This document shows, piece after piece, positions 1-14,401 of a stretch of DNA of 64,000 nt (positions are counted from its first letter, which is position 1; each line of letters starts with the position of its first letter). The translations under genes and the position numbers were made by a program. The notes beneath the pieces were generated by a model, which saw nothing but the letters and a program-made list of their open reading frames with translations, did not search any database and was not told the origin of the DNA. The DNA is from Lepidodermella squamata (taxonomy: Eukaryota; Animalia; Gastrotricha): NCBI GenBank assembly GCA_047495785.1, contig JBLDXI010000003.1, positions 1,240,001-1,304,000 on the forward strand, written 5' to 3'.

Positions 1-223
1 CAACGTTCAAAACAGGGCTGGTCTTTCTCCATTAATGATTGCGGCGAGATATGGTTACCTTGAAATTTTAGAGATGCTCCTTCAAGTTAGAAGTATCAAC
101 CTAGCGGCCAAGGATACCTATGGCTTCACAGCTACAGACTTTGCGTTTCAGTTCAAAAACTACGAAGCAGCCGGTCTTTTGACGATGTTTGAGGTCAGAA
201 ATTCGGCGAAGAAGGACGCGTGA
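1..223 (+). CDS. 3' end of an ankyrin-repeat gene (last two repeats); probably another CCP-ankyrin cluster member, truncated by the window edge
   Basis: GLSPLMIAARYGYLEILEMLLQVRSINLAAKDTYGFTA.. aligns with repeats 6-7 of the downstream paralogs. TGA at 221-223 and AATAAA at 315-320. Confidence 0.8.
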   Translation, partial: NVQNRAGLSPLMIAARYGYLEILEMLLQVRSINLAAKDTYGFTATDFAFQFKNYEAAGLLTMFEVRNSAKKDA

Positions 224-514
224 GCTGATTACTGATAATTATCTTTAAAACTCGTTGTATTTTTTTGTAAATCTTTCGTCGTCGCTCATTCTGCTCGCTG
301 ATATGAAGAAAAAAAATAAAAGGCACGTCGAGCAAGTTGACCAACACTAGTAGTTGAATACTTTTAACAAGTTAGTTTATGGTCACGTATGAAGGTTCTG
401 CTGCTACTGCTGGCCAGGCTCTTGGATTAATAGCATTACGCATAGGCACCTGTGATATCACGATGTAGTTTCTCGCTAGCCTAGAGAATTATTTACACGA
501 CCGACGTGTTTATC

Positions 515-2517
515 ATGATGCTTGTCGTCCTAACCACAATTTTACTATTTGCACTATCAAATGCCGTTGAATTTTGCCCGCGGCAAATCAACATCTTCAA
601 CGGCAATGTCGATTTCAGTGACGGCCGACCTAATCCTGTCGGAATTCGGCGACCTCTACTATGCTCGAAAGGTTTTATATCCCTTGGCCAACCTTACGTC
701 GAATGCACATCTGACGGCTGGTTCGTACCAGGAAATTGCATAAATCGAAGTAAGATTTTAAAAACCTCACAGGACGACTTTATCGTGATTTTCTTTTAGC
801 TTCATTTAGATGCCGGAGATCTGACGGATCATTACCTAAAATCGCATTTTGGGACAGCCCAGAATGGGTTGATGATTATTGGTTCGTAAGGCGTTCTTTC
901 AACTGTGTTGCTAATTACACCCTGAAAGGATTAAGCTATTACGAATGTGACGAAAATCAGAGAGCTCAATGGAAGGCAAGGGGATTCTGCGAGCTTACCG
1001 AAAATCAACTGACAGTCAAAAAAATCGTGCCAATGTGTTCCGATCTGGCGATGAATTTCCTTCCAAACGCGAATTTCACGGGAAATGCGATTCTAGCTCC
1101 GGCTGGGTATTACACAAGATTTTTCCGCTGTAATCCCGACTATTACCTATTTGGAAGCTCCCCGACTGCGTTGTGCAATCCAAATGAGAAGAGAAGTGAA
1201 TACTCTGGTTGGAAAATTCTTGGATCATGTCGACAAGGTTTGATTTATAATCCATCAATTTTTGGCTTAATTTTCTTGTTTTCAGATCCGATGAATTTCC
1301 CAACATGCCCCGAACCTATAATCGAAAATGGGCAAGTTCGAGTAGGAGCGAACACATTCTCCTCCCGCCGCTTCTTCCGCTGCGCTGCTGGCTATGAATT
1401 GCTTGGCGTCAACCACATTATTTGCACTCTAAATGGAACTTGGTTCACCGCAGGAGGCTGTGTACCAGTTGGACAGACAACTATGTTCCCAGCTACAACA
1501 ATTGCCGCCACTACCACGATAAATTATCCTTCTATTTTCGAGTTCGTGTCATTTCGCTCCCGTGCGCTGTCTAATACTAGTTCGCAGCTACCGTATTTTC
1601 GAAACAGCACTACAACTATGCAACCTAGCGTTGCCAGGATAACTATTCAACTAAAGACGACACTCAGGCCGAGAACAACAATGGGAGATTCTCCATTTCA
1701 AGCAATCACTCGGCGCAGGTCAACAACAGTTGCCCCCACTCAAGGAATCCCCCAAGGAATCATGAGATCAACTCAGGGGCAACTAAACACATGTATTTGT
1801 GGAGAAATCAACTCGCCAGACCTGGTCGCAGCAGCGAAATATGGAAACATTCAAACAGTTCAGTATCTCTTATCAAACGGGGCAAGTTACAATTCCGTTG
1901 ACGAAGCAAATCAAACGGCGCTACATGCTGCAATTCGAAATAACCAACAGCGAGTTGTTGAGATTTTCATGTCATGCGTTGAATGCATCAACCTCGAGGC
2001 TAGAGCTAATGACGGCGCGAACACTTTAATGGCCTTATCCAAAAGCAACGATTCATTGCCTGCTCTTGAGTATCTGTTGGCCAAAGGCGGCTTCGATCTC
2101 AACTCTGCGAACCGAAACGGCTCAACTGCTCTTCACATGGCTGCCGAGAATGGCAATATAGGAGCTTTGAGGATTCTCGTTGCCTCTGGGGCTAATTTGA
2201 ACAAATTAGACCATAAAGGAAATACGCCACTGCTAAACGCTGTTAGGAGTGGGTCGTTAGATTCAGTTCGGATTCTTCTCATGGGAACGGCGAATGTCAA
2301 CTTGAGTAGCAATAACGGCACATCGCCATTGATGGAAGCTGCTAGACTTGGTAATACAGATATTGTTAGGATGCTACTACGGCACCCGAGAATTAATCTC
2401 GATATCGTGGACAGTAAAGGCAATACAGCTGAAATGTTGGCCTACGCTAACAGGAACTTGGACGCTGGTCTGTTAATTCAAGAGAAACGCGAAAAAATGA
2501 AATTGAACTCAAATTAA
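515..2517 (+). CDS. Secreted Sushi/CCP(x4)-Thr-rich linker-ankyrin(x7) protein (cluster gene 1); exons 515-749, 800-1237, 1286-2517
   Basis: Hydrophobic N-terminus MMLVVLTTILLFALSNA. Four C..C..GY..G...C...W...GxC modules and seven GxT(A/P)LxxA ankyrin repeats. Two phase-1 GT-AG introns of ~50 nt; AATAAA ~2570. Confidence 0.85.
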
Positions 2518-2704
2518 ACTAATTAACTTATTTTGTATTAAAATCATTCACATGTTTTTGCAACGGAAAAATAAAAGATTAAAGCCGCGCACTGCTGCTA
2601 TTTTGGCTATTACCACCGCAAAACATAAATACGGATTATAGCGATAAGCTGATATAAAATTTTGCGCATGCTCGTCTCAAATGTCAACATTTGTTTAAAC
2701 CACA

Positions 2705-4567
2705 ATGCTACTCACAGCGATAATAATTGGTACCTTTGCTTGTGCGACATCCGCACAAATTTCTGAGGGCAATGTTTGCGCCAATGAACTTTCCATCTAC
2801 AATGGATACGTTGACTTCAGTGATGGCAAGGTGAATCGAATCGGTGTGTCTCGGGCAATCATCTGCAGGCCTGGCTTTATAAGCATGGGCTGGCCAATTG
2901 TTACTTGCGTCTCAACAGGATGGTCTGTGAGAGGAACATGCGTTAACCGAGGTGAGATATTTTCAATCTTTAGTTCCCAACCATTAGTATTCTAACATTT
3001 CAAGCTATGCTAAAATGCCCAAGCTCGGACTATGCACTGGCTTCGAATGCGTATTTCACCGAACCAGAGTGGGCGGATGAAGAATGGGTGCTGAGGCGAT
3101 CATTTGCTTGCGGACAAGGCTACGAACTTCGCGGGTCAAGCTTTTACGAATGTTCCGATGACGACCATCAACCGCAGTGGGTGGCTAGAGGGTTCTGCGA
3201 AATGGCTACCAACAACCGCGAGCCGACTACAGATGACCTGTGGCAATGCTCTGAATTCGCATCGGATGGCTTAGTGAAAAATGGAGAATTCCCTGTCGAA
3301 TCGCGTTCAGCCCCTGCAGGATATCTCGTCCGCGATTTCCGGTGTTTACCGGGTTACTTCGCGACTGGATGGGCTCAGATTGCTGTTTGCAACCCAGCTG
3401 AACGCAGGGAAAGATACTCTGGCTGGAAAGTACTCGGCGGCTGCACTATGCGTAATTATTAATCCATTGAACATTAATTCTTTTATTTTTCCATTCTGAA
3501 TAGGTCAAATCATTTTTCCAAACTGTGGCACGCCGTTGGTCGAGAACGGCAAAGTAGAGCCAGGAGAAGAAACACCCGGAGCAACGCGGACGTATCGATG
3601 TAACAAGGGCTACAAAAGGATGGGTGCTGATCAGTTAATCTGTTCTGTCGATGGGACCTGGTTCACCTCAGGAATTTGCATACCTTCACCAAGTGATATC
3701 GATCAAGTATCCACTGTTGCAAGTTTAAAACTAACAACTAAACGAAGGAAGAGGCCTACAACGCGAACTACAATCAGACGAACTACAAGAAAGCCGACTA
3801 CAACTCAACAGAAATGTAAATGTGGCTCGAGGAATTCGAAAGATCTCGTATTAGCGGCTGAATCTGGCAGTGTTAGGAAGGTCCAATACTTCCTTAATAA
3901 GGGCATCAGTTACAATTCAAGAGACTCTGCAAATCGATCAGTACTCCTGGCAGCTTGCGAGAATGAACAGAGCGAAGTCATTAAAGTTCTGTTCAAATGC
4001 ATCGAATGCATTGACGTTAACTACGCTGATTCAAATGGAATAACTGCTCTAATGCATCTAGCTAAATCTAATCGAACAGTTGAGCACATTCAAAATTTGA
4101 TTACGCAAGGGGTTAACGTGAATGCTGCGAGTAAAAATGGCTCAACAGCTCTCCATTTTGCGGCTAGTTCTGGGAGTTACGTCGCTATTCGTCTTCTTCT
4201 CATGTCCGGAGCTTGGCCTAACAAAATGGACCATGGAGGCAATTCGCCTCTGATCTACGCCGTCACAGGCCGATTTTCCGAGGCAGTTAAAGTTATAATC
4301 AACGGTAAAGGAAACGTGAATCTATCAAATAATACTGGATTTTCGCCGCTCATGGTTGCGGCAAAACTTGGCTATTTAGAAATCGCGAATATTCTACTAG
4401 GTCAGCCGAAAATTCTGCTGGATATTGTTGATAGGGACGGAAATACGGCCGAGAAACTGGCTTATTCGATGGGGCTATTTGAAATTGTCAGTCAAATTCG
4501 ATTAAGGCGGAAACAAAATGATACAGAGTCTGAAAAGGATTCCAGACTACACAGATTCGGAACCTGA
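2705..4567 (+). CDS. Secreted CCP(x4)-basic/Thr linker-ankyrin(x7) protein (gene 2, close paralog of gene 1); exons 2705-2951, 3005-3451, 3504-4567
   Basis: Signal peptide MLLTAIIIGTFACATSA. Same exon structure and same CCP inserts as gene 1 (NPAERRERYSGW vs NPNEKRSEYSGW). Splices keep the frame; AATAAA ~4590. Confidence 0.85.
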
Positions 4568-4708
4568 ATTATTGTTTTGCTTTATTGTAAATAAACGTTT
4601 GGATTCTTTGCACTCTTTTTAAACGCCCACTTATTTGAGTGTGTTAAGCATTAAGTTTACACGGCTTCCACTCACTGTTGTCCACAGTCCGGCATCAGGC
4701 CTGAAAAA

Positions 4709-5828
4709 ATGTATACAGGCTTCTTTGTTTTGCTAGCTGCTGTTAGCTCGAGTAAGTTTTACACGCAAAATTCTAAAATCTGACAAATCTCTCCTCTAGT
4801 TGCCGTTTTTGATGTCGAACGGTCTGGAAAATGTACTCCAGAGCCGTACGGGCTTGAAAACGCGAATTTTACTGAATTCGGTTGGGAGACCAATGGAACA
4901 GTGTGGAAAAAATTTGAATGTGATCGTGGCTACGCCATAAGCGGCCAGCCATTTATTAGATGCGATCCTAACAACGGAACAGGCCGATGGGAGCTCCAAG
5001 GGAATTGTGTTGCCGGTACGCGTTAACAAATTTCTGTATAACTGTATAAACTCAAGTGATATGAAGGTTCTTTCGCGAAGAATTGTGGCGCAGATCCGAA
5101 AATCGACTACGCTTTTGTGTACCCTGGATCCTCTGCAGTAGGTTCAGTTCGCTACTTCTCCTGCGATGCTGGCCTTCGAGTCGTTGGGGAGCCGACTGTC
5201 ACATGTGGAAGCGAAGGCCGCTGGAGGTCCTGGGGGACATGTCAAGTGGGAAGTAAGTCTTGCATCACGAAAAGGATTGATTCGATCAATCTATTTCACA
5301 GCTGACCCTCCTCAACGCTGCGAACGCTATGCTAGACTCCTTAACGCTATTGTCGATCAAAGCAGTGGCGCCCTGGTCGGTACTACCCGGTATTTCACAT
5401 GCGCCCCTGGTTACTACCTTGTCGGACGCAATTCGATAACGTGCCGCTCGCCTGGTTACTGGGACCCAGCTGGCGACTGTCGTAAAGGCTGTGGGGAGCC
5501 TGCCTCTATCGAAAATGGCGGTTTTGGCTACGGCCAGTCTGATACGAATGCAGCGAGAAAGGTGTACTGTTTCGACGGATACCAATACAATGGTTTGACT
5601 TCGATGATTGGATGTCGTGAAGACGGAACTTGGAGCGAGTTGGATGGTTCTTGCGAGCCAACTATCGAGTATGTTGATCCGGTGTGGGGAATGGTTAATG
5701 CTAGGTTACAAATGGCGACAACGCGAGAACCTCCTCGCCCAACCCCCACGCTAAGAAGGATCATTCTTGGAGCTGCAGCAGTTACGAGAAACGATGTCAC
5801 CACGCCTCATCTAGATCAAATGGGATGA
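4709..5828 (+). CDS. Secreted CCP(x4)-only protein (gene 3); 4 exons ~4709-4751, 4800-5015, 5067-~5252, 5302-5828
   Basis: MYTGFFVLLAAVSS|IA signal peptide is split by an intron. Four CCP modules and a Pro/Thr/Arg tail, with no ankyrin. AATAAA ~5864. Confidence 0.8.
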
Positions 5829-6295
5829 ATTATGGACTAAATGAATTGCAGTTAAAAATGAGCAATAAATGGGAATTTTTAATTTCCATCGAAATTATGA
5901 TTTTTTGCTGCTTAATTTTCATCATTCAGAAGAACATTTCACTTGAATTCCGAGTGTTAGTAAAATCTAAGACGCCCACATCTAAGTGCAATATTTCAAT
6001 CTTACTACAAGATTGAAGTTGGTCATCTCAAAACCTGCCCGCTAATACGTGGAAACGCCAATTGTGCTTGCGAATACTACAAGACCACGTTTAAGTGTAA
6101 TTTGTGTTGTTTTTTCATGGTGGTCACTCTCTCGCGTCAAGCAGCCAAGTATGAGTTGGACAAAAAGATGAGTTTATGTTGTTGGCCGCTCAACATGAAA
6201 AGCAGGCTTGTAATTAAGCCAATGATGTAGTTACTATCAATGTTAATATAAAAACAAATTAATGACTGTTGTTGATGTGAGATTACACGACGGTG

Positions 6296-8410
6296 ATGAT
6301 TCTAGAAATCTTAAGCATCGCGGTAGCAGTACTTACCATTCAAGCGCAGCCGAACGCAAGCCCTTGCGTCCTGGTTCCGGTTGTTGAGAATGGCTACGTT
6401 GATTTGGCTGGTAACCCAAATGTGGTAGTAGGCGAAACGCGCATCGTGCGCTGTAACTTGGATGCTAGTTATGTCATATTCGGCAGCACTCGCGTCTTCT
6501 GTACCGAGAATGGATGGACCCAACCTGGTAGATGCATCCGGGGTCAAAGTAAGCATAAACATCAGGGAACCTTTTTTGATCCGCAATTTTAACATCGGGG
6601 AAAATCTTTAAATAGGTTACTAAAGCTTACTGAACCTTTTCCCCAATAATTTTCTTAAAGATTGCATTTTCTGACCTATTTTCCCTGCATAGTATCGTTA
6701 AGCCGGCAATGTCGACCGTTATTGGGACAAGAAGTTCCTAATGCTTACTACACGTCAGAAGAGTACCAGAACACAAACGGCGCCCAGCAACGACTGTTCG
6801 CCTGCAAAGATGGCTACAAGTTGAAAAATATGGGCCTAATCCTCTGCCAATGGGATCCGATGGCCAACGTAGCTGTATGGAAAGCTTTCGGAACCTGTGA
6901 ATTGCGTATGGCAAGGAAAATTCTGAATCTCTTATTTTCTAACCAAATTTGTTTTCCAGCTGCTAAGAACGCAAATAAAGACTGCTCAGAACCCTCGCTA
7001 CCTAACGGCAGGGTCTTCACTGGAACGAATGAAGACGGTGTCATAAGAGGCTTCACGTGCCTTCCCGGTTTTACTCTGACCGGCTCGGCATTAATAACCT
7101 GTAGCAACGGGACTTGGGTTGCTACGGGGGAGTGTTTAAGCCCTCTTGAAAACGATGTATCGCTTCGACCATCTCGAACCACTGTCTTCACATTTCCAAC
7201 ATTTCCGACTTCGACAGAGTTTCCAACTTTCCCTCCACGGCCTGCTACAACAACACCAGTACCAACGGTGTTCTTCATCACAGTTCCGATGTTTTCCACC
7301 CCATCAACGCGCCCGTTTACTATGAACACGGATTTCATCCCCCTTCGGTGCCCAGATAACCCGATGACTCCGAATGCCATCATAAAACCGGGTGGAAATC
7401 TTCCTGGGGACATGCGCCTGTTTGACTGCCGTGATGGCTACGTGTTGACTGGCAGGGGAAGGCTGGTTTGCAGTCGATCCGGCGTTTGGTTACCAGATGG
7501 AGATTGTTCGGCTCCAAGTATGTTGTCACATCAAAAGCAAATTCAAGTGAAAAGTTATTTTTGAAATAGGCTTCTCGTTTTTAACGCCAAAACCTGGCAC
7601 TCAACGTAAGTTTAACACAGCGGAAAGAATGCATTATATTTGATTATTCTTTCAGTTACAACATGGCGGAATACAATTGGGACCGAAGAATTTCCAGCAG
7701 ACTGCAAATGTTTTGGCCGGCAAAACTCTCCGGACCTAATTCAGGCCGTGAAGACGGGTAATTTGGCGAGGGTGGACCAACTACTCTCCGTGGGTGATGC
7801 AGATCCAAATTCTGTTATAGCTGGTTGGACCGCCTTAATGGTGGCATGTGACAACGCGAATGGCGTCATTCTCGATAGGCTCCTTGAATGCGGGTCTTGC
7901 CTAGAGGTCGACAAGAAAAACGAGGCTGGAACTACAGCGTTGATGTTCGCGGCAACAGATGAAGATTTCTCGTTTGGCGCCGGTAAACTACTGACAGCAG
8001 GCGCGAAAGTTAACGAACGCGACGGCTTAGGAACAACTGCTCTATCACTTGCAGCTCAATACGGACGAACTGAAACTGTTAGGACTTTGATAAGATATGC
8101 TGCGAACATCAACGTGGTCGACAATTTTTCAAACACTCCCCTTCTTTACGCAACAGCTGGGAATCATACAAGCACGGTCAGGCTACTGCTTTTCGCTGGA
8201 GCGGATGTTAATGCGAGAAATGCAAGAGGCAGTACGGCTATGATGATAGCTGCTCGTTGGGGCTACATTGAAATTGTCGGAGCGCTACTGAATTTCAATC
8301 CGAATTTGTACATAGCCGATAGTGATGGCAAAACAGCATTGCGTATCGCAGAAAGCTACGGCCAAACAAGGATCGCTCAGATTCTCAGAAACAGCATGAC
8401 CTCTGCTTAG
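6296..8410 (+). CDS. Secreted CCP(x4)-ankyrin(x7) protein (gene 4); exons ~6296-6548, 6693-6905, 6960-7517, 7570-7605, 7656-8410
   Basis: Signal peptide MILEILSIAVAVLTIQA. Three CCPs, an FPT-rich linker, a fourth CCP, then CKC..NSPDL and seven ankyrin repeats. Phase-1 introns; AATAAA ~8435. Confidence 0.85.
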
Positions 8411-8519
8411 TATTTTTGTATCAGTTTTGTTAGAAATAAAAGCGGATTAGCTACTCAGATTAACGTGATACAAGCGGTGAAAGCCTCATCACGTTATCTT
8501 CTTTTAACATCTTTAACAA

Positions 8520-9904
8520 ATGTATTCAACTTTGGTTATCATTTGCGTTTCCTTCTTCATTCCGGTAAAGCTTCAAAGTATTCCCGCGGGTAGGCTAAAT
8601 TAGGATTTGCTGCCAACTGGTTATACTTGCCATTATTTCAAGCCAAGAACTGCTACCCCTTAGCCAATGTTCCAAATGGCGTGATGGGACCTGGTAGTAA
8701 CGAAATCGGGGCCGAGAGGAACATTACGTGCAACAAAGGCTATGTTTTGGTGGGCCCTCCGAAAATCATTTGTTCCACGGCAGGGAAATGGTATATGAGA
8801 TGCCGATGCATGCCAGGTAGACTGATTTCTCAGAATTCTTCAACCTCGTATTGATTTTCGAAAATAGCCAATCTTACACGATGCGGCCGTCCTCTATCGG
8901 TGGATGGTGGGACCTATCGAATATCAGCAGACAATACCTCTGTTTACCTCGATTGCAATGCCGGCTATCGAATCACGCGACCTTCTATTTTAAAATGTGA
9001 GCAGACTGGATTTTGGTCAAGGCCCCAAGGCTTCTGTATACCAAATGACGCCCCAACTGCTGTAACTTCAACTGTTAATCCTAACAAGTGTTGCGCAGGT
9101 AGCAGGTCGAATTCCTTGGCTCTAGTCCAAGCAGCAAGAGCTGGAAATATCACTTTGGTGGATAGAATTTTGCTAACGGGAAATGCCTCTGCTAACTCGA
9201 GAGATGCCAACGGATGGACAGCTTTAATGTGGGCTGCGAATAATCGACATAGAAATGTAGCCAATCGACTGTTACAATGCTGTGCTGATCCAAATCTGAA
9301 AAGCTACTCGAACACTACGGCTCTAATGTTAGCCGTAAAGAGTGGAAGTTCAGAGATAGTCAAGGCCTTACTATCAAAGAAAGCGGATACAAACGTGGCA
9401 AATCAGTATGGCTCGACTGCTGCCCTTTTTGCTGCTCAAATTGGTGATTTGGATGCTTTAACGCTTCTTCTAAATAACGGAGCCGATGTGTCAGCAAGGG
9501 ATATCAGCAACAATACTATGTTGCACACAGCTGTTCGGGGGAACCATATTGATATAGTCAAGTTTTTACTCCGGATGAAGGAAATTGACGTAAATGCTGT
9601 TAATAACGATGGGATATCACCTCTAATGCTAGCTGCTAATTCTGGCTTTACGACTGTTGTGACGCATCTACTTGAAGTTGAGGGGATCGACCTATTCCTC
9701 GGCGATAATGAGGGCCGAACTGCAAGGACATTGGCGGAGGAAAAAGGCCACTCGGAAATTGTTTCGCTGTTGGAAGATGCTGAGAATGGATTCGAAGTAA
9801 ACATGATGACTGAAATAATTGAATCGACGACTTCGACCCTTACTAAACTCACAGCGAAGACCGCAGGTACAACAGAGTCCGATGCATCGTTCGGTCTACC
9901 TTGA
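8520..9904 (+). CDS. Secreted CCP(x2)-ankyrin(x7) protein with Thr-rich tail (gene 5); exons ~8520-8589, 8643-8816, 8868-9904
   Basis: MYSTLVIICVSFFIP N-terminus, two CCPs, then KCCAG..NSLAL and seven ankyrin repeats. AATAAA ~9952. Confidence 0.8.
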
Positions 9905-10403
9905 GCACTATTTGGAAAAAAATTATTAGATTACTTTTGATTGTTTAGAAAAATAAAAACAACAGTCGCGTTCGTTTGATTTCACGTTTCACTGCCGGAT
10001 GGTTTATTCGAACTAAAGATAAAGCAAGAGTTAGCGTCCTTCATATCTGCACTCCGACCTTTGAATCCCTTAGGCCGCTGTGTTATGGGATCTAGGGTCC
10101 ATTCGCACCAGTTATGAGTAAGGTTTGTTGCAGAGAATATTCAGTTACTCATTCACAGAATGAAAAAATAGTAGCCTAAACACGTCTGTCGACGTAAAAA
10201 GTAGTGAAATTCCCCGTTATACTTTTTTCCAACGGCTGACGTGCCTTGTGATATTGCACGCCTACGTTCGACTTGGTGACTCATTCGAGGACCGTGACGT
10301 GTTTAGTAGCCCTACGCAACACGAATCAAGGGCTCTAAATAGCCTTCGAAATTCAGGCCTAACCATTCAGTTCTGAAATACTTGAAAGCAAATAACAACA
10401 ACA

Positions 10404-10874
10404 ATGCAGTTTGTTCTTCTTACTTTGGCCCTGGTGGCTGTTCTACCTAGTACTCTATGCTTATCCTGTGATCAACTCCCGTTGGCAAAACACGGTTTCT
10501 TCATAGTGCCACTCAATGGGATGCCATCTGATGATGTACCAGATTTCCGAGTCCACTCAGCCATTCTAGTCTGTAATGCTGGATATAAACTGGTTGGTGA
10601 ATCTTTGATCAAATGCATGGACAACAATGAATTCAGTCAAATTGGTCAATGCATCCCTGGCCCTTGTGGCGAACCGCCTGTTATAGCGAAAGGCAACATT
10701 TTCTTCGATGGTGATAGCAAGCCCGAAGAAAGAGTCTCTATCTACTGTGATGACGGCTATTCTTTGGCTGGCAACGCGTTTTCCAGCTGTGACGCCCTGA
10801 CAAAGAAATGGAGCGAACCCGGAAAGTGCTTGCCAGATCCATCGGCAACTCCAAGAAAGCCTTACTTTTCATGA
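10404..10874 (+). CDS. Small intronless secreted CCP(x2) protein (gene 6)
   Basis: Signal peptide MQFVLLTLALVAVLPSTLC and two CCP modules in a single ORF. AATAAA ~10912. Confidence 0.85.
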   Translation: MQFVLLTLALVAVLPSTLCLSCDQLPLAKHGFFIVPLNGMPSDDVPDFRVHSAILVCNAGYKLVGESLIKCMDNNEFSQIGQCIPGPCGEPPVIAKGNIFFDGDSKPEERVSIYCDDGYSLAGNAFSSCDALTKKWSEPGKCLPDPSATPRKPYFS

Positions 10875-11573
10875 TTCCTGAACATGAGCAGTTCAATGCT
10901 TGATTTTTCCTAATAAATTGTGAATATTTTTGAAAGGATTGGTTATTTAAAAATTAAACTTGTATAGAAATTTTATCAATTTTCATGGTAGTGTTTGTAG
11001 TAGTAGAACTTGGGTAGAAAGTAGGTAAAAGTTGCTAATGTTAAACATTTCAGTCTCAGGTCTCAGCGTAACTTTCTTTAGGTAAAACTTAGAAGGTATT
11101 TGCCTTGTTTCTATTTATGTTTGGAGATACTTTGTCTACATAAATATTTCCCCTTACTAAAGTGTAATGAATAAGATGTGCGGCTTAGTGTCTCAACTAG
11201 TACCGCTCTCTAGCAGTATTATATACAATTTATACCCGCAAACACGCGCGCACTCTATTCTGCGGCATCGCTTTGCACTAAGAATTGTAATATACAAGTA
11301 TTAAGTATAACACATAACGTGTGTCTATTCACGGCCGTTTTTCCACTGTACACGCGCGGCCAGCCGGGCGCTTTGAGTTCCATTCACCTCAATGCTTTAC
11401 CTATCAATTGACACCACAACGACAACAACAATAACAATAAACATTTTATGACTTAAGGTGGCCATTCTAGGCCGCCTATTGATATACGAGAGCCTTATTA
11501 TGCGAATACCACTCCTGAAAAAATATTAAAACTTTGATAAATTATTTTAATTGATTTATCTTAGATCAAAATA

Positions 11574-14401
11574 ATGGATATTTTTCGGATTTTCATTGTT
11601 TTGGTTGGAGCTAATTTTGTGAGTGCTGAGAGCCTTGAGCACCATGAGCATCGTATGCGGGTTGTTAAATCGATGTCTTTTGACGACGAAGGTAAGAATT
11701 ACCGCTGTTCAAGTGATATTATCGCGATTTCCTCCTAGGCCCACTTCCACCGTCCTGTGGAGCCCTGCCTGAGGTCGACAATGGCTATTTCGTGAGAGGA
11801 TGGGGCTTTCACGTCGGCCACATTCGCTTTATTAAGTGCTTCGATGGTTACGAGCTTGAGGGCCCTTCGAATACAATGTGCCGCTGGACTGGCTGGACGC
11901 TCCCCGGTAAATGCGTCAAGCCATTACCAGAAAAGTGCATGTTAGAGCCGCGTGTACCGAACGCTCGTGTTTCAACTGGCCAAAATTGGGTCGGCTCAAG
12001 GCGCGAGTTTGACTGTTTGATCGGCTACAAATTGGACGGCTTCGCTGGGGTGGTCTGCGATGCTTTCGGCCGGTGGATAGCTATGGGAGACTGCATACCT
12101 CGTAAATTTGCCTTTGCTCGTTTCTATTCTTTCATGTTTTCGTCTTTTTAGTTTTCCCTGTTACTACAACGAGGCGGCCGGGTGATTTACCAGGTTACAG
12201 AAACTGCGTGGACACTTGATGATTTTACTGCACTGCTTTGATGACATCACTTGCAATTTTTTAAGATGCAATCAACAATTGTTAGCCGCGTGATTTTTCC
12301 AATAAAAACTGCTGAACATTAATTTTTGAAATCTACAGCGAATAGCACATCGTTATCCAATGCGACGGAGGCGGGAAATGTGACGAGGCTGTTACCTCCT
12401 GGACTTCTGGCTAGAACCGTCACGCCAACCATTAGAAGTCCAATCACTACTACTACATCAAGAACTGATCTTGGGAATCAAACAATAACTCTTAATCGAA
12501 ATAGCACTGAAGTTCCGCGAATCGCTCAGAACTCAACAACACAGCGACCATTCACAAATGCGACGTTAACCCCCACAAGGATTGCAACTGGCAACGCTTC
12601 TTTGCCTTCAACTTTGAAACCACTGGTTGTTACAACATCAAATGCGATAGCCATAACAACTCCGGCTTTACGTTCAAATCAAAATTCAACAAGTTTAATC
12701 AGCACAACTACTCCAAGAACATTTTCGAACGTTTCGATCGCGTTCATTGCCCCAAATGTTACCTTGCCACTGAGCCCGAGAGGATTCACCACTGTTACTT
12801 TACCTTCTCGCCTAACGAATGAAACTTTGCTCATCACGACTGTGAAACCTGCGATGAATGCTACGACTCGAATTGTTTCGACAAACAGGACGGACATTCC
12901 TGGCCCTGCCAACTCGACATTGGCGAGAATGACCACCGCGAGTCCTGGTAATTCGAGTAGGAATCAGTCACTTTCTGTGGATATAACAACAAACAAGCCC
13001 GAAACCACGACGGAAATTTCAGCTCGGACATTGACCAGCATTTCGACAAGAAGTGACTCTGCGACAACGACTTCCAGGGCGATTACGCAGTTATCATCGT
13101 TCAATACTACAGCACGGCAAAATTCAACAGGTCCAGCAAAAAATCTGCCCCGGCCAACTTCGCCATCGTTCATTGGGAATTTGACGCAAGCTAATGTGAC
13201 TACAGTTCGTCCAACGAAAGGTAAAGGCTACTAACTCGAAGTTATCCAACATTTTGAAACCTTGCACGCATAAACCCGGAACAACCATAATACATGCTTT
13301 AATGTTAACTTTAACTCAACAGTAACAGTAACAGTAACCACATCACGACCTTTACCCAGCTTGCCAATTTTCATCATTCGAAGGACTACAACAGCGCGAG
13401 AAACAAGCACGATCGCAAGTGATTTAAACCAAGGTATTGCTTTTAACGCTGATAACGTTCAAAAAATGAGAGTTACTAACATTTCATCGCTTAGAACTCC
13501 GAAACAGTCTAAATTTATAATGTATATTCACAGTGAAAAAATTGGGAGGCTCAGAGAATCGGGAAATTAAGTTTGTTGGAACGAAAGATATTGGATCCGT
13601 AAAACAAAATAAGTCAGCCAACTCAAAATGCTGCGGGATTTACCCCAAAGTGCAATCTTGGCGCTTGGTCGAAGCTGCTAGAGTAGGGAACGTTTCAGTG
13701 CTCACTGAACTTCTCGACTATGACGCTGATCCGAATACGAACGAAACCTCTGGCGGATGGACAGCTTTACAGGTGAGCGAAAAGCTAGATTCCTAAATCA
13801 TTTGAGACTGATGATTCTCTGGCAGTGGGCAGCTAACAACGGCCGTGTTGAAATAATGCGGGAGCTGCTAAAGTGTTGCGCCGATCCCGACTATCAGAAC
13901 ATCGCTGGCTCGACTGCACTCATGTTTGCTGTACGCAGCGGAATTTTCGACTCTGGCGATGTGCTTATCAAATCTGGCGCCCATGTCAACATCGCCAACA
14001 ACCTCGGCTCGACCGCAATTCACTTTGCCGCCCAAAGCGGTCAGCCAGAGATTGCTGCTTTGCTCCTTGAGAGTGGCGCGAATGTTAATCAGGTCGACAA
14101 AGATGGAAATACTGCGTTGATTTGGGCGGCGAGGACGAATAATCTGCGAACTGTTCGAGTGCTATTAGCTAGGTCTGGTATCGATGTTAATTGGGCCAAT
14201 ACCAAGAAAATGACGGCATTAATGGCGGCGGCTCGTGGTGGCTTTAGCGATATTGTTGAAGCTCTCCTTCTCGAAGGAGCCGAGACAGATTCAAAGGACG
14301 AAAATGGCTACACTGCTCTTGCGTTGGCTAAACTTTACAATAAAAGCAACACTGTCAAGCTACTTGAAAATCCGAAATCTCAGTACTTTTTATTTGATTG
14401 A
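11574..14401 (+). CDS. Secreted CCP(x2)-long mucin-like stalk-ankyrin(x7) protein (gene 7); ~7 exons
   Basis: MDIFRIFIVLVGANFVSA signal peptide and two CCPs (~11740-12100). A ~300-aa Thr/Ser/Asn-rich exon (12339-13220), then KCCG and ankyrins with an intron at 13773-13825 (GWTALQ|WAANN). AATAAA ~14424. Confidence 0.8.

What the first reader, a model, noticed from the sequence alone, without database searches (positions are those of the whole stretch)
1..14401. Tandem family of secreted Sushi/CCP-ankyrin chimeric proteins with no transmembrane segment
Seen: five complete genes join a signal peptide, 2-4 disulfide-type CCP modules and a Thr-rich linker directly to a fixed 7-repeat ankyrin domain, with no hydrophobic span between them. 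Known: ankyrin repeats are almost always cytosolic or nuclear (spider latrotoxins are a secreted exception), while CCP modules are extracellular. Inference: this is a diversified secreted system. It could be natural DARPin-like binding or immune proteins, or effectors/toxins with a CCP targeting part and an ankyrin payload. I do not recognise this architecture.
Basis: partly seen in the sequence, partly recalled or inferred. Interest (0 to 1): 0.9.

Follow-up and report, generated by a model that had tools for sequence, protein, structure and literature searches.

The report
Secreted sushi-ankyrin protein gene family
An unidentified small-intron animal has a tandem family of genes for proteins that should be exported from the cell yet end in ankyrin repeats, a binding module normally found only inside cells; here the repeats carry four fixed cysteines, and I found no description of such a family.

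Summary
Window 515-14401 has five + strand genes. Each encodes a signal-peptide-like N-terminus, 2-4 CCP (sushi) modules, a Thr/Ser-rich linker and one seven-repeat ankyrin module. No membrane span or hydrophobic C-terminus follows the signal peptide.

In three genes the last CCP, the linker and the ankyrin module share one uninterrupted ORF. In gene 1, spliced GT..AG contig joints link the signal-peptide exon to that ORF. Differences from related public runs are 31 synonymous to 7 non-synonymous.

The array runs about 51 kb (about 17 ankyrin-bearing ORFs, 24 ankyrin modules). Some single ORFs hold 3 or 6 modules.

Every module but one has four invariant cysteines: two before repeat 1 and two after repeat 2. 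This motif was absent from 390 other retrieved proteins, about 270 of them ankyrin-rich.

Best reading: secreted, glycosylated, soluble binders with a disulfide-clamped extracellular ankyrin domain. The ligand and biological role are unknown.

The closest published case I found is Toxoplasma RON9, which has a C-terminal membrane span.

This scan had already noted the same family at other places in this genome.

The parts
2..220 (+). 3' end (last 73 codons) of the upstream family member; its CCP-linker-ankyrin ORF starts at C3:1238919, outside the window
515..2517 (+). Gene 1. Exons 515-749 (signal peptide + CCP1), 800-1237 (CCP2-3) and 1286-2517 (CCP4, Thr-rich linker of about 110 aa, ankyrin module).
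   Evidence: Pfam Sushi 1.1e-9 and Ank_2 3.8e-36 in one ORF. Both introns seen as GT..AG joints in X1 contigs, which cover 649-2439 and not the intergenic DNA. Translation.
1777..2514 (+). Gene 1 ankyrin module: CxC before repeat 1, CxxC after helix 2 of repeat 2, seven repeats
   Evidence: alignment A1; AF2 pLDDT 94.4 with 7 helix pairs; Foldseek TM 0.80-0.85 to AnkB R8-14 and DARPins
2705..4567 (+). Gene 2. Exons 2705-2951, 3005-3451 and 3504-4567. Same layout as gene 1; ankyrin module at 3800-4534.
   Evidence: sparse X1 contigs over 3435-4429
4709..5828 (+). Gene 3, CCP-only paralog: signal peptide, 4 CCP, Pro/Thr tail, no ankyrin. Exons 4709-4751, 4800-5015, 5067-5252 and 5302-5828.
   Evidence: Pfam Sushi 7.9e-14; intron 5253-5301 seen as a joint and covered by X1; model
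6296..8410 (+). Gene 4. Signal peptide, 3 CCP, Pro/Thr linker, a 4th CCP, a 36-nt mini-exon (7570-7605), then the ankyrin module at 7688-8407. The join to the ankyrin exon needs introns 7518-7569 and 7606-7655.
   Evidence: no RNA data laid here
8520..9904 (+). Gene 5. Hydrophobic N-terminus (first intron uncertain: 8547-8593 or 8590-8642), 2 CCP (intron 8817-8867), short linker, ankyrin module at 9074-9808 with CC...CC cysteines, Thr-rich tail.
   Evidence: Sushi and Ank in one ORF 8900-9904; models
10404..10874 (+). Gene 6a, CCP-only: signal peptide plus 2 CCP in one ORF
   Evidence: Pfam Sushi 1e-10 with two stretches; hydrophobic N-terminus
11574..14401 (+). Gene 6b. Signal peptide, 2 CCP, Ser/Thr/Asn-rich stalk of about 300 aa (12339-13220) dense in NxS/T, then an ankyrin module (13614-14398, intron 13773-13825). 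Linker introns are provisional.

Best explanation
These genes encode soluble secreted glycoproteins. A cleavable signal peptide takes the chain into the ER. There the CCP modules form their disulfides, the Thr/Ser-rich stalk is glycosylated, and the C-terminal seven-repeat ankyrin module folds in the lumen and is exported.

The ankyrin module is adapted to that route. Two cysteines just before repeat 1 and two in the loop after helix 2 of repeat 2 most likely form two disulfides that pin the N-terminal cap to the stack. This resembles the cysteine caps of extracellular LRR proteins.

The proteins then act outside the cell as binding or recognition modules. The ankyrin surface would bind a ligand, and the CCP modules would bind a partner or surface.

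Shown: the architecture, the lack of a membrane span, transcription and splicing of gene 1, purifying selection, and the invariant cysteines.

Inferred: actual secretion, the disulfides, glycosylation, and any binding role.
For: - Sushi and Ank share one ORF in three genes. An upstream member has a signal peptide, mucin stretch and ankyrin module in one 656-aa ORF.
- GT..AG joints at 749/800 and 1235/1284 link the signal-peptide exon to the ankyrin ORF. X1 gives no cover of intergenic DNA.
- Hydrophobic peaks of 1.6 or more occur only at the N-terminus. C-termini are hydrophilic.
- Differences from related runs are 31 synonymous to 7 non-synonymous.
- Four cysteine columns are invariant or nearly so across 15 modules that are 28-44% identical.
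- 19 of 22 modules have an even cysteine count. Four of the seven extra cysteine pairs lie about one repeat (30-34 aa) apart; the other three are CxxC.
- The cysteine motif is absent from 390 other retrieved proteins, about 270 of them ankyrin-rich.
- The ankyrin modules hold 71 NxS/T sequons against 49 +/- 6 in shuffles.
- The ankyrin fold is confident and canonical. CCP1 is a true CCP.
Against: - No protein-level evidence of secretion, disulfides or glycans.
- Signal peptides were judged by simple rules, not by SignalP.
- X1 is only presumed to be RNA, and its contigs are short, so no single record spans a whole transcript.
- Three modules have an odd cysteine count and one module has no cysteine clamp.
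- Four cysteines could instead bind a metal.
- Variability is spread over both faces of the repeats, so no binding face stands out.
- The expressing tissue and the organism are unknown.
Confidence: 0.6

Rival explanations
1. The proteins are cargo of a gland or secretory organelle and are delivered to another organism or cell (venom, adhesive, or effector). The CCP-mucin part would serve for targeting or packaging. The ankyrin module would act on or in the target, as in apicomplexan rhoptry protein RON9 or spider latrotoxins.
For: The architecture has a signal peptide and no anchor. RON9 combines a signal peptide, ankyrin repeats and a sushi domain and sits in a secretory organelle. The family is large, tandem and lineage-restricted.
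Against: No pore-forming, enzymatic or translocation domain was seen in these genes. Each paralog looks conserved rather than fast-evolving. The organism's lifestyle is unknown. RON9 has a C-terminal membrane span, which is absent here.
Confidence: 0.15
2. The proteins enter the secretory pathway but stay cell-associated. They would be held on the cell surface or matrix through their CCP or mucin parts, and would act as adhesion or matrix components rather than free humoral binders.
For: CCP arrays and mucin stalks are typical of surface and matrix proteins (general knowledge). Some members have 3 or 6 ankyrin modules in a row, suited to multivalent scaffolding.
Against: There is no membrane span or GPI-type hydrophobic C-terminus. 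No known matrix-binding domain was found.
Confidence: 0.15
3. The four conserved cysteines form a Cys4 metal (zinc) site rather than two disulfides. This would fit a reducing compartment and weaken the case for an extracellular ankyrin domain.
For: CxC plus CxxC resembles zinc-knuckle spacing. No coordinates of the AF2 model could be inspected, so the geometry went unchecked.
Against: Most modules have vicinal CC...CC pairs, which are unusual zinc ligands. Four of the seven extra cysteine pairs lie one repeat apart, as expected for inter-repeat disulfides. The modules sit downstream of a signal peptide, CCP modules and a mucin stalk in the same ORF.
Confidence: 0.07
4. The finding is an artefact. 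The genes are mis-joined or dead, or the proteins are really cytosolic because the N-terminal hydrophobic stretches do not act as signal peptides.
For: G4, G5 and G6b joins rest on sequence-only splice predictions.
Against: Three fusions lie in single ORFs. Spliced contigs exist for gene 1. The 31:7 synonymous excess argues against dead genes. CCP modules and mucin stalks do not fold or get modified in the cytosol (general knowledge).
Confidence: 0.03

Closest known systems
Toxoplasma gondii RON9 and its coccidian/Cryptosporidium orthologues (PMC3299665)
   Same: A secretory-pathway protein with a signal peptide that combines ankyrin repeats (5-6) with a sushi/CCP domain and low-complexity repeats.
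   Different: RON9 has one sushi domain, PEST repeats and a predicted C-terminal membrane span, is single-copy, and lives in rhoptry necks of a protist. Here there are 2-4 N-terminal CCPs, a mucin stalk, a fixed seven-repeat module with four conserved cysteines, no membrane span, and dozens of tandem paralogs in an animal. Sequence homology was not tested.
Extracellular LRR binders with cysteine caps (for example lamprey VLRs, Slit, Toll ectodomains)
   Same: This is a functional analogy only. Both have a solenoid repeat domain exported from the cell, stabilised by disulfide-bonded capping segments, and often carried on a Thr/Pro-rich stalk (general knowledge).
   Different: The fold differs (LRR, not ankyrin). 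VLRs are assembled somatically and GPI-anchored. No somatic diversification or anchor is seen here.
Regulators of complement activation and other CCP-array proteins (factor H, DAF, CR2)
   Same: Tandem CCP modules separated by phase-1 introns. The CCP1 profile matches factor H, factor XIII B, CR2 and DAF modules.
   Different: None of those carries ankyrin repeats. No complement-related function is shown here.
Alpha-latrotoxin and designed ankyrin repeat proteins (DARPins)
   Same: Ankyrin stacks that work outside the producing cell. The model superposes on DARPins and AnkB repeats at TM about 0.8.
   Different: Latrotoxins lack a classical signal peptide and CCPs and have about 20 repeats plus a pore-forming part (general knowledge). 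DARPins are man-made and free of cysteines.
Notch-type receptors (extracellular modules, membrane span, cytosolic ankyrin)
   Same: Disulfide-rich extracellular modules and ankyrin repeats in one polypeptide.
   Different: The defining membrane span between the two parts is absent here.

Membership tests
CCP / Sushi module (PF00084) | Module of about 60 aa with four cysteines and a conserved Trp, matching the Pfam model above its gathering score | tested here: met
   Scores of 28.8-55.4 bits against a cut-off of 20.7 for modules in G1, G2, G3, G4, G6a and G6b, and 22.8 for G5. The CCP1 profile hits factor H at 4.8e-32 and single CCP chains at 1e-5 to 1e-11.
CCP / Sushi module (PF00084) | The same, for the second and third modules of G1 and G2 | tested here: inconclusive
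   Pfam gives 18.9 bits, below the cut-off. The profile against PDB reaches E 0.006 to CR2. The AF2 model is all-beta but pLDDT is only 61. The 4-Cys plus Trp pattern is present.
Ankyrin repeat domain (PF00023 / PF12796) | Tandem 33-aa helix-turn-helix repeats forming a stack | tested here: met
   Ank_2 E-values of 1e-32 to 1e-60. AF2 pLDDT 94.4 with seven helix pairs. Foldseek TM 0.80-0.85 to AnkB R8-14, ankyrin-G and DARPins.
Type I receptors with cytosolic ankyrin (Notch-like) | A membrane span between the extracellular modules and the ankyrin repeats | tested here: not met
   After the N-terminus, no 19-residue window exceeds 1.42 on the Kyte-Doolittle scale in G1-G4 or the upstream SP-mucin-Ank ORF. 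The one window at 1.85, in the six-module ORF, lies in an ankyrin helix region. CCP4, linker and Ank are one ORF in G1, G2 and G5.
RON9-type apicomplexan rhoptry neck protein | Signal peptide, ankyrin repeats and a sushi domain together with a C-terminal membrane span; orthology to TgRON9 | tested here: not met
   The signal peptide and the Ank-plus-Sushi combination are present. The C-terminal membrane span is absent. Orthology was not tested because no RON9 sequence was in hand. The RON9 description comes from PMC3299665.
GPI-anchored surface protein | Hydrophobic C-terminal GPI signal | tested here: not met
   All five C-termini are hydrophilic. No dedicated GPI predictor was run.
Classically secreted protein | Cleavable N-terminal signal peptide recognised by a trained predictor; protein found outside cells | not testable with these tools
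   Only rule-based evidence is available. Each N-terminus has a hydrophobic core of 10-14 residues right after Met, and four of the five (G1, G2, G4, G6b) end in Ala at -1 before a polar stretch, with a small residue at -3 in G1 and G2. The G5 model is unsettled.

The most novel reading that the evidence does not exclude
This animal has turned the ankyrin repeat into an extracellular recognition scaffold. The scaffold is a disulfide-capped seven-repeat cassette, duplicated into dozens of secreted CCP-mucin-ankyrin genes. According to other unchecked notes of this scan, it is also fused to trypsin-like proteases. That would make it a humoral recognition system built on ankyrin, as VLRs and Toll-like receptors are built on LRRs.
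Probability: 0.3. Interest if true: 0.85.

Novelty: new variant of a known kind. Interest (0 to 1): 0.7.

Why it matters
Ankyrin repeats are among the commonest binding modules in biology, but they are treated as cytosolic or nuclear. Engineered DARPins are valued partly because they need no disulfides.

A natural, expanded and selectively maintained family of exported ankyrin domains would show that the fold can work in the secretory pathway. It would give a natural template for disulfide-stabilised ankyrin binders. It would also point to an unexplored extracellular recognition or adhesion system in a poorly sampled animal lineage.

The idea is directly testable by expressing one gene with its own signal peptide, then mapping its disulfides and glycans and searching for ligands.

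Tried and rejected
**Searches for relatives that gave nothing useful**
- The word-index search with the G1 ORF returned only generic ankyrin proteins. None of the 120 listed carries PF00084.
- The exhaustive profile search with 15 clamped modules was swamped by giant ankyrin arrays: 993,475 hits, the top 150 all 931-6572 aa.
- The CCP part alone found nothing at E <= 0.001.
- Two ESM Atlas searches gave only generic ankyrin clusters.
- These blanks do not show that the family is absent elsewhere. The genome's own proteins are not in the collection.

**Organism identification failed**
- An intronless HSP70 has no exact entry.
- Its best relatives are an unnamed metagenome protein at 83% identity and assorted molluscs, arthropods, tardigrades and vertebrates at 73-78%.
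- No nematode SL1 sequence and no COX1 were found in the assembly.

**Ideas dropped**
- Proprotein-convertase cleavage in the linker: an RxKR motif occurs in G2 only, 1 of 22 linkers.
- Hypervariability focused on the concave face: entropy is high at DARPin-randomised positions (2.5 against 1.9 bits) but equally high on outward helix-2 positions. One repeat was also a residue out of register. This is inconclusive.
- dN/dS between paralogs: the closest pair is 57% identical, too diverged.
- The AF2 model of CCP2-3 was too weak to search with.
- The first literature query was badly chosen and returned food papers.
- Rfam and tRNA scans of the window were empty.
Full report
**What is in the sequence**

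The window is G000:C3:1240001-1304000 of a 121-Mb animal assembly in 151 contigs. Its introns are about 47-53 nt with GTAAG...TTTCAG-type ends.

Pfam finds both Sushi and ankyrin families inside single uninterrupted ORFs at 1027-2517, 3536-4567 and 8900-9904. It finds one or the other in the flanking exon-sized ORFs. So for three genes the CCP-to-ankyrin fusion does not depend on any splice prediction.

**Gene models**

Frame-preserving short GT..AG introns give five CCP-ankyrin genes on the + strand:
- G1: 515-2517
- G2: 2705-4567
- G4: 6296-8410
- G5: 8520-9904
- G6b: 11574-14401

- G3 (4709-5828), a CCP-only gene.
- G6a (10404-10874), a CCP-only gene.
- The 3' end of an upstream member at 2-220.

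Every inter-CCP intron I placed is phase 1, as is usual for CCP modules. The G4 ankyrin exon is reached through a 36-nt mini-exon. The first intron of G5 and several linker introns of G6b are provisional.

**Transcription and selection**

Run X1 has no library record and is only presumed to be RNA. Its contigs skip exactly 750-799, 1236/1238-1283/1285 and 5253-5301 with GT..AG ends. They cover G1 (649-2439) and G3 and leave the intergenic DNA at zero depth, while run X2 covers everything evenly like DNA. This links the G1 signal-peptide exon through the CCP2-3 exon to the CCP4-linker-ankyrin exon.

The X1 contigs are short (about 100-230 nt among those listed), so no single record spans a whole transcript.

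Of the 40 listed differences between the window and these runs, 38 fall in my coding models. Of those, 31 are synonymous and 7 are not, and neither of the two in the G1 ankyrin module changes an amino acid. The frames are therefore real and under purifying selection. Only 40 of 132 differences were shown, so this is a sample.

**Secretory features**

Each model starts with Met followed by a hydrophobic core of 10-14 residues, and four of the five CCP-ankyrin genes (G1, G2, G4, G6b) then have Ala at -1 before a polar stretch.

In G1-G4 a 19-residue Kyte-Doolittle scan reaches 1.6 or more only at the N-terminus. Later peaks are 1.42 or lower and lie in ankyrin helices or CCP strands. C-termini are hydrophilic, so neither a membrane span nor a GPI signal is apparent. 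My first G5 models were out of frame and G6b was not scanned. Their corrected translations show no long hydrophobic run by eye.

The linkers are Thr/Ser/Pro-rich. The G6b stalk of about 300 residues is dense in NxS/T.

An upstream member (C3:1235715-1237682) has a signal-peptide-like start, a long mucin or Pro-rich stretch and the ankyrin module in one 656-aa ORF. This is splice-independent evidence that the ankyrin module follows a signal peptide.

SignalP and DeepTMHMM were not available.

**The domains**
- A three-sequence profile of the first CCP exon hits complement factor H at 4.8e-32 and isolated CCP chains at 1e-5 to 1e-11.
- The second and third modules of G1 and G2 keep the 4-Cys plus Trp pattern. 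They are otherwise only marginally recognised, and their AF2 model is weak at pLDDT 61.
- The ankyrin module folds with pLDDT 94.4 into seven helix pairs. It superposes on AnkB R8-14, ankyrin-G and DARPins at TM about 0.8.

**Extent of the family**

An HMM of the five window modules finds 24 complete or split modules in about 17 ORFs, all on the + strand, from C3:1,203,053 to 1,254,398.
- One 866-aa ORF has a CCP, a mucin stretch and three modules.
- One 1404-aa ORF has six modules, each separated by Ser/Thr-rich spacers.

Further full-length modules lie elsewhere on C3 and C1. The genome also has a very large Sushi repertoire, with 1,734 first-look candidates.

Other notes of this scan report the same family, and trypsin-CCP-ankyrin fusions, elsewhere in this genome. 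I did not check the protease fusions.

**The cysteine clamp**

Across 15 modules that are only 28-44% identical, four cysteine columns are invariant or nearly so. Two lie just before repeat 1, as CC or CxC. Two lie in the loop after helix 2 of repeat 2, as CC or CxxC.
- One module lacks all four.
- 19 of 22 modules have an even cysteine number.
- Four of the seven extra cysteine pairs lie about one repeat (30-34 aa) apart, which places them on neighbouring repeats in a stack. The other three are CxxC.
- A regular expression for the clamp matches 17 of 21 family modules.
- NxS/T sequons in the modules number 71 against 49 +/- 6 in shuffles, with recurrent columns.

Two disulfides tying the N-cap to the stack is the simplest reading. 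I could not inspect model coordinates, so a Cys4 metal site is not excluded.

**Mechanism**

The best-supported account is that these proteins are co-translationally translocated, glycosylated and exported as soluble molecules. Their ankyrin domain is extracellular and disulfide-stabilised, and they act by binding something.

What they bind is unknown. Paralogs are old, with median 33% and maximum 57% identity. Variability is spread over both faces of the repeats. The sampled between-lineage changes spare the ankyrin domain. I therefore see stable, diversified specificities rather than an ongoing arms race.

Rival readings remain open: gland or organelle cargo delivered to another organism, or a cell- or matrix-associated scaffold.

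**Comparison with what is known**

Full-text searches found no animal family of secreted ankyrin proteins. They found only one protein combining a signal peptide, ankyrin repeats and a sushi domain. This is Toxoplasma RON9 and its orthologues, which have 5-6 ankyrin repeats, one sushi domain, PEST repeats and a predicted C-terminal membrane span (PMC3299665).

The present family differs from RON9 in several ways:
- module order and number
- the absence of a membrane span
- the cysteine clamp
- copy number
- host kingdom

Functionally the nearest analogy is the cysteine-capped extracellular LRR solenoid. Database searches for relatives were uninformative, and the organism could not be named.

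**Verdict**

The interpretation of a secreted, diversified family is supported. The specific functional guesses remain untested.

Noticed in passing
L005:1872-4469 (C3:1211872-1214469) and L005:5895-10000 onward (C3:1215895-1220106): Single ORFs of 866 and 1404 aa carry three and six complete cysteine-clamped ankyrin modules in tandem, separated by Ser/Thr-rich spacers. The seven-repeat module therefore behaves as a duplicable cassette. In the six-module ORF, four modules are shortened to about five repeats.
   Followed up: partly
L007:5715-7682 (C3:1235715-1237682): One 656-aa ORF joins a signal-peptide-like start, a long Pro/Thr/Ser-rich stretch and a clamped ankyrin module with no CCP at all. 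The ankyrin cassette can therefore be exported without sushi modules.
   Followed up: partly
L006:1352-2086 (C3:1221352-1222086): One family member has lost all four clamp cysteines together. It keeps two other cysteines 36 residues apart, so the clamp shows an all-or-none pattern.
   Followed up: no
window:4709-5828 and window:10404-10874: Two CCP-only genes (signal peptide plus 4 or 2 CCP, no ankyrin) sit inside the array. The first is transcribed and spliced in run X1. They may be members that lost, or never gained, the ankyrin exon.
   Followed up: partly
whole genome G000: The Sushi repertoire is very large (1,734 first-look candidates, of which the 150 scored all pass the cut-off). It sits in dense clusters, for example on C15 at about 5.0 Mb, C19 at about 2.47-2.52 Mb, C33 at about 1.155-1.162 Mb and C3 at about 2.84-3.19 Mb.
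   Followed up: no
L001:1390-3327 (C2:1536188-1537993): An intronless cytosolic HSP70 of this genome has no exact entry in the 15-billion-protein collection. Its best match is 83% identical, from unnamed metagenome scaffolds. Named animals reach only 73-78%, so the lineage seems poorly sampled.
   Followed up: partly
window:450-6400, run X1: Many X1 contigs show 'opposite strands' joints about 100 nt apart inside exons. These look like fold-back assembly artefacts of that run rather than biology.
   Followed up: no
window:14402-64000: The family stops at 14401. The remaining 50 kb has only three ORFs of 150 aa or more, no tRNA and no Rfam match. It was not annotated further.
   Followed up: no
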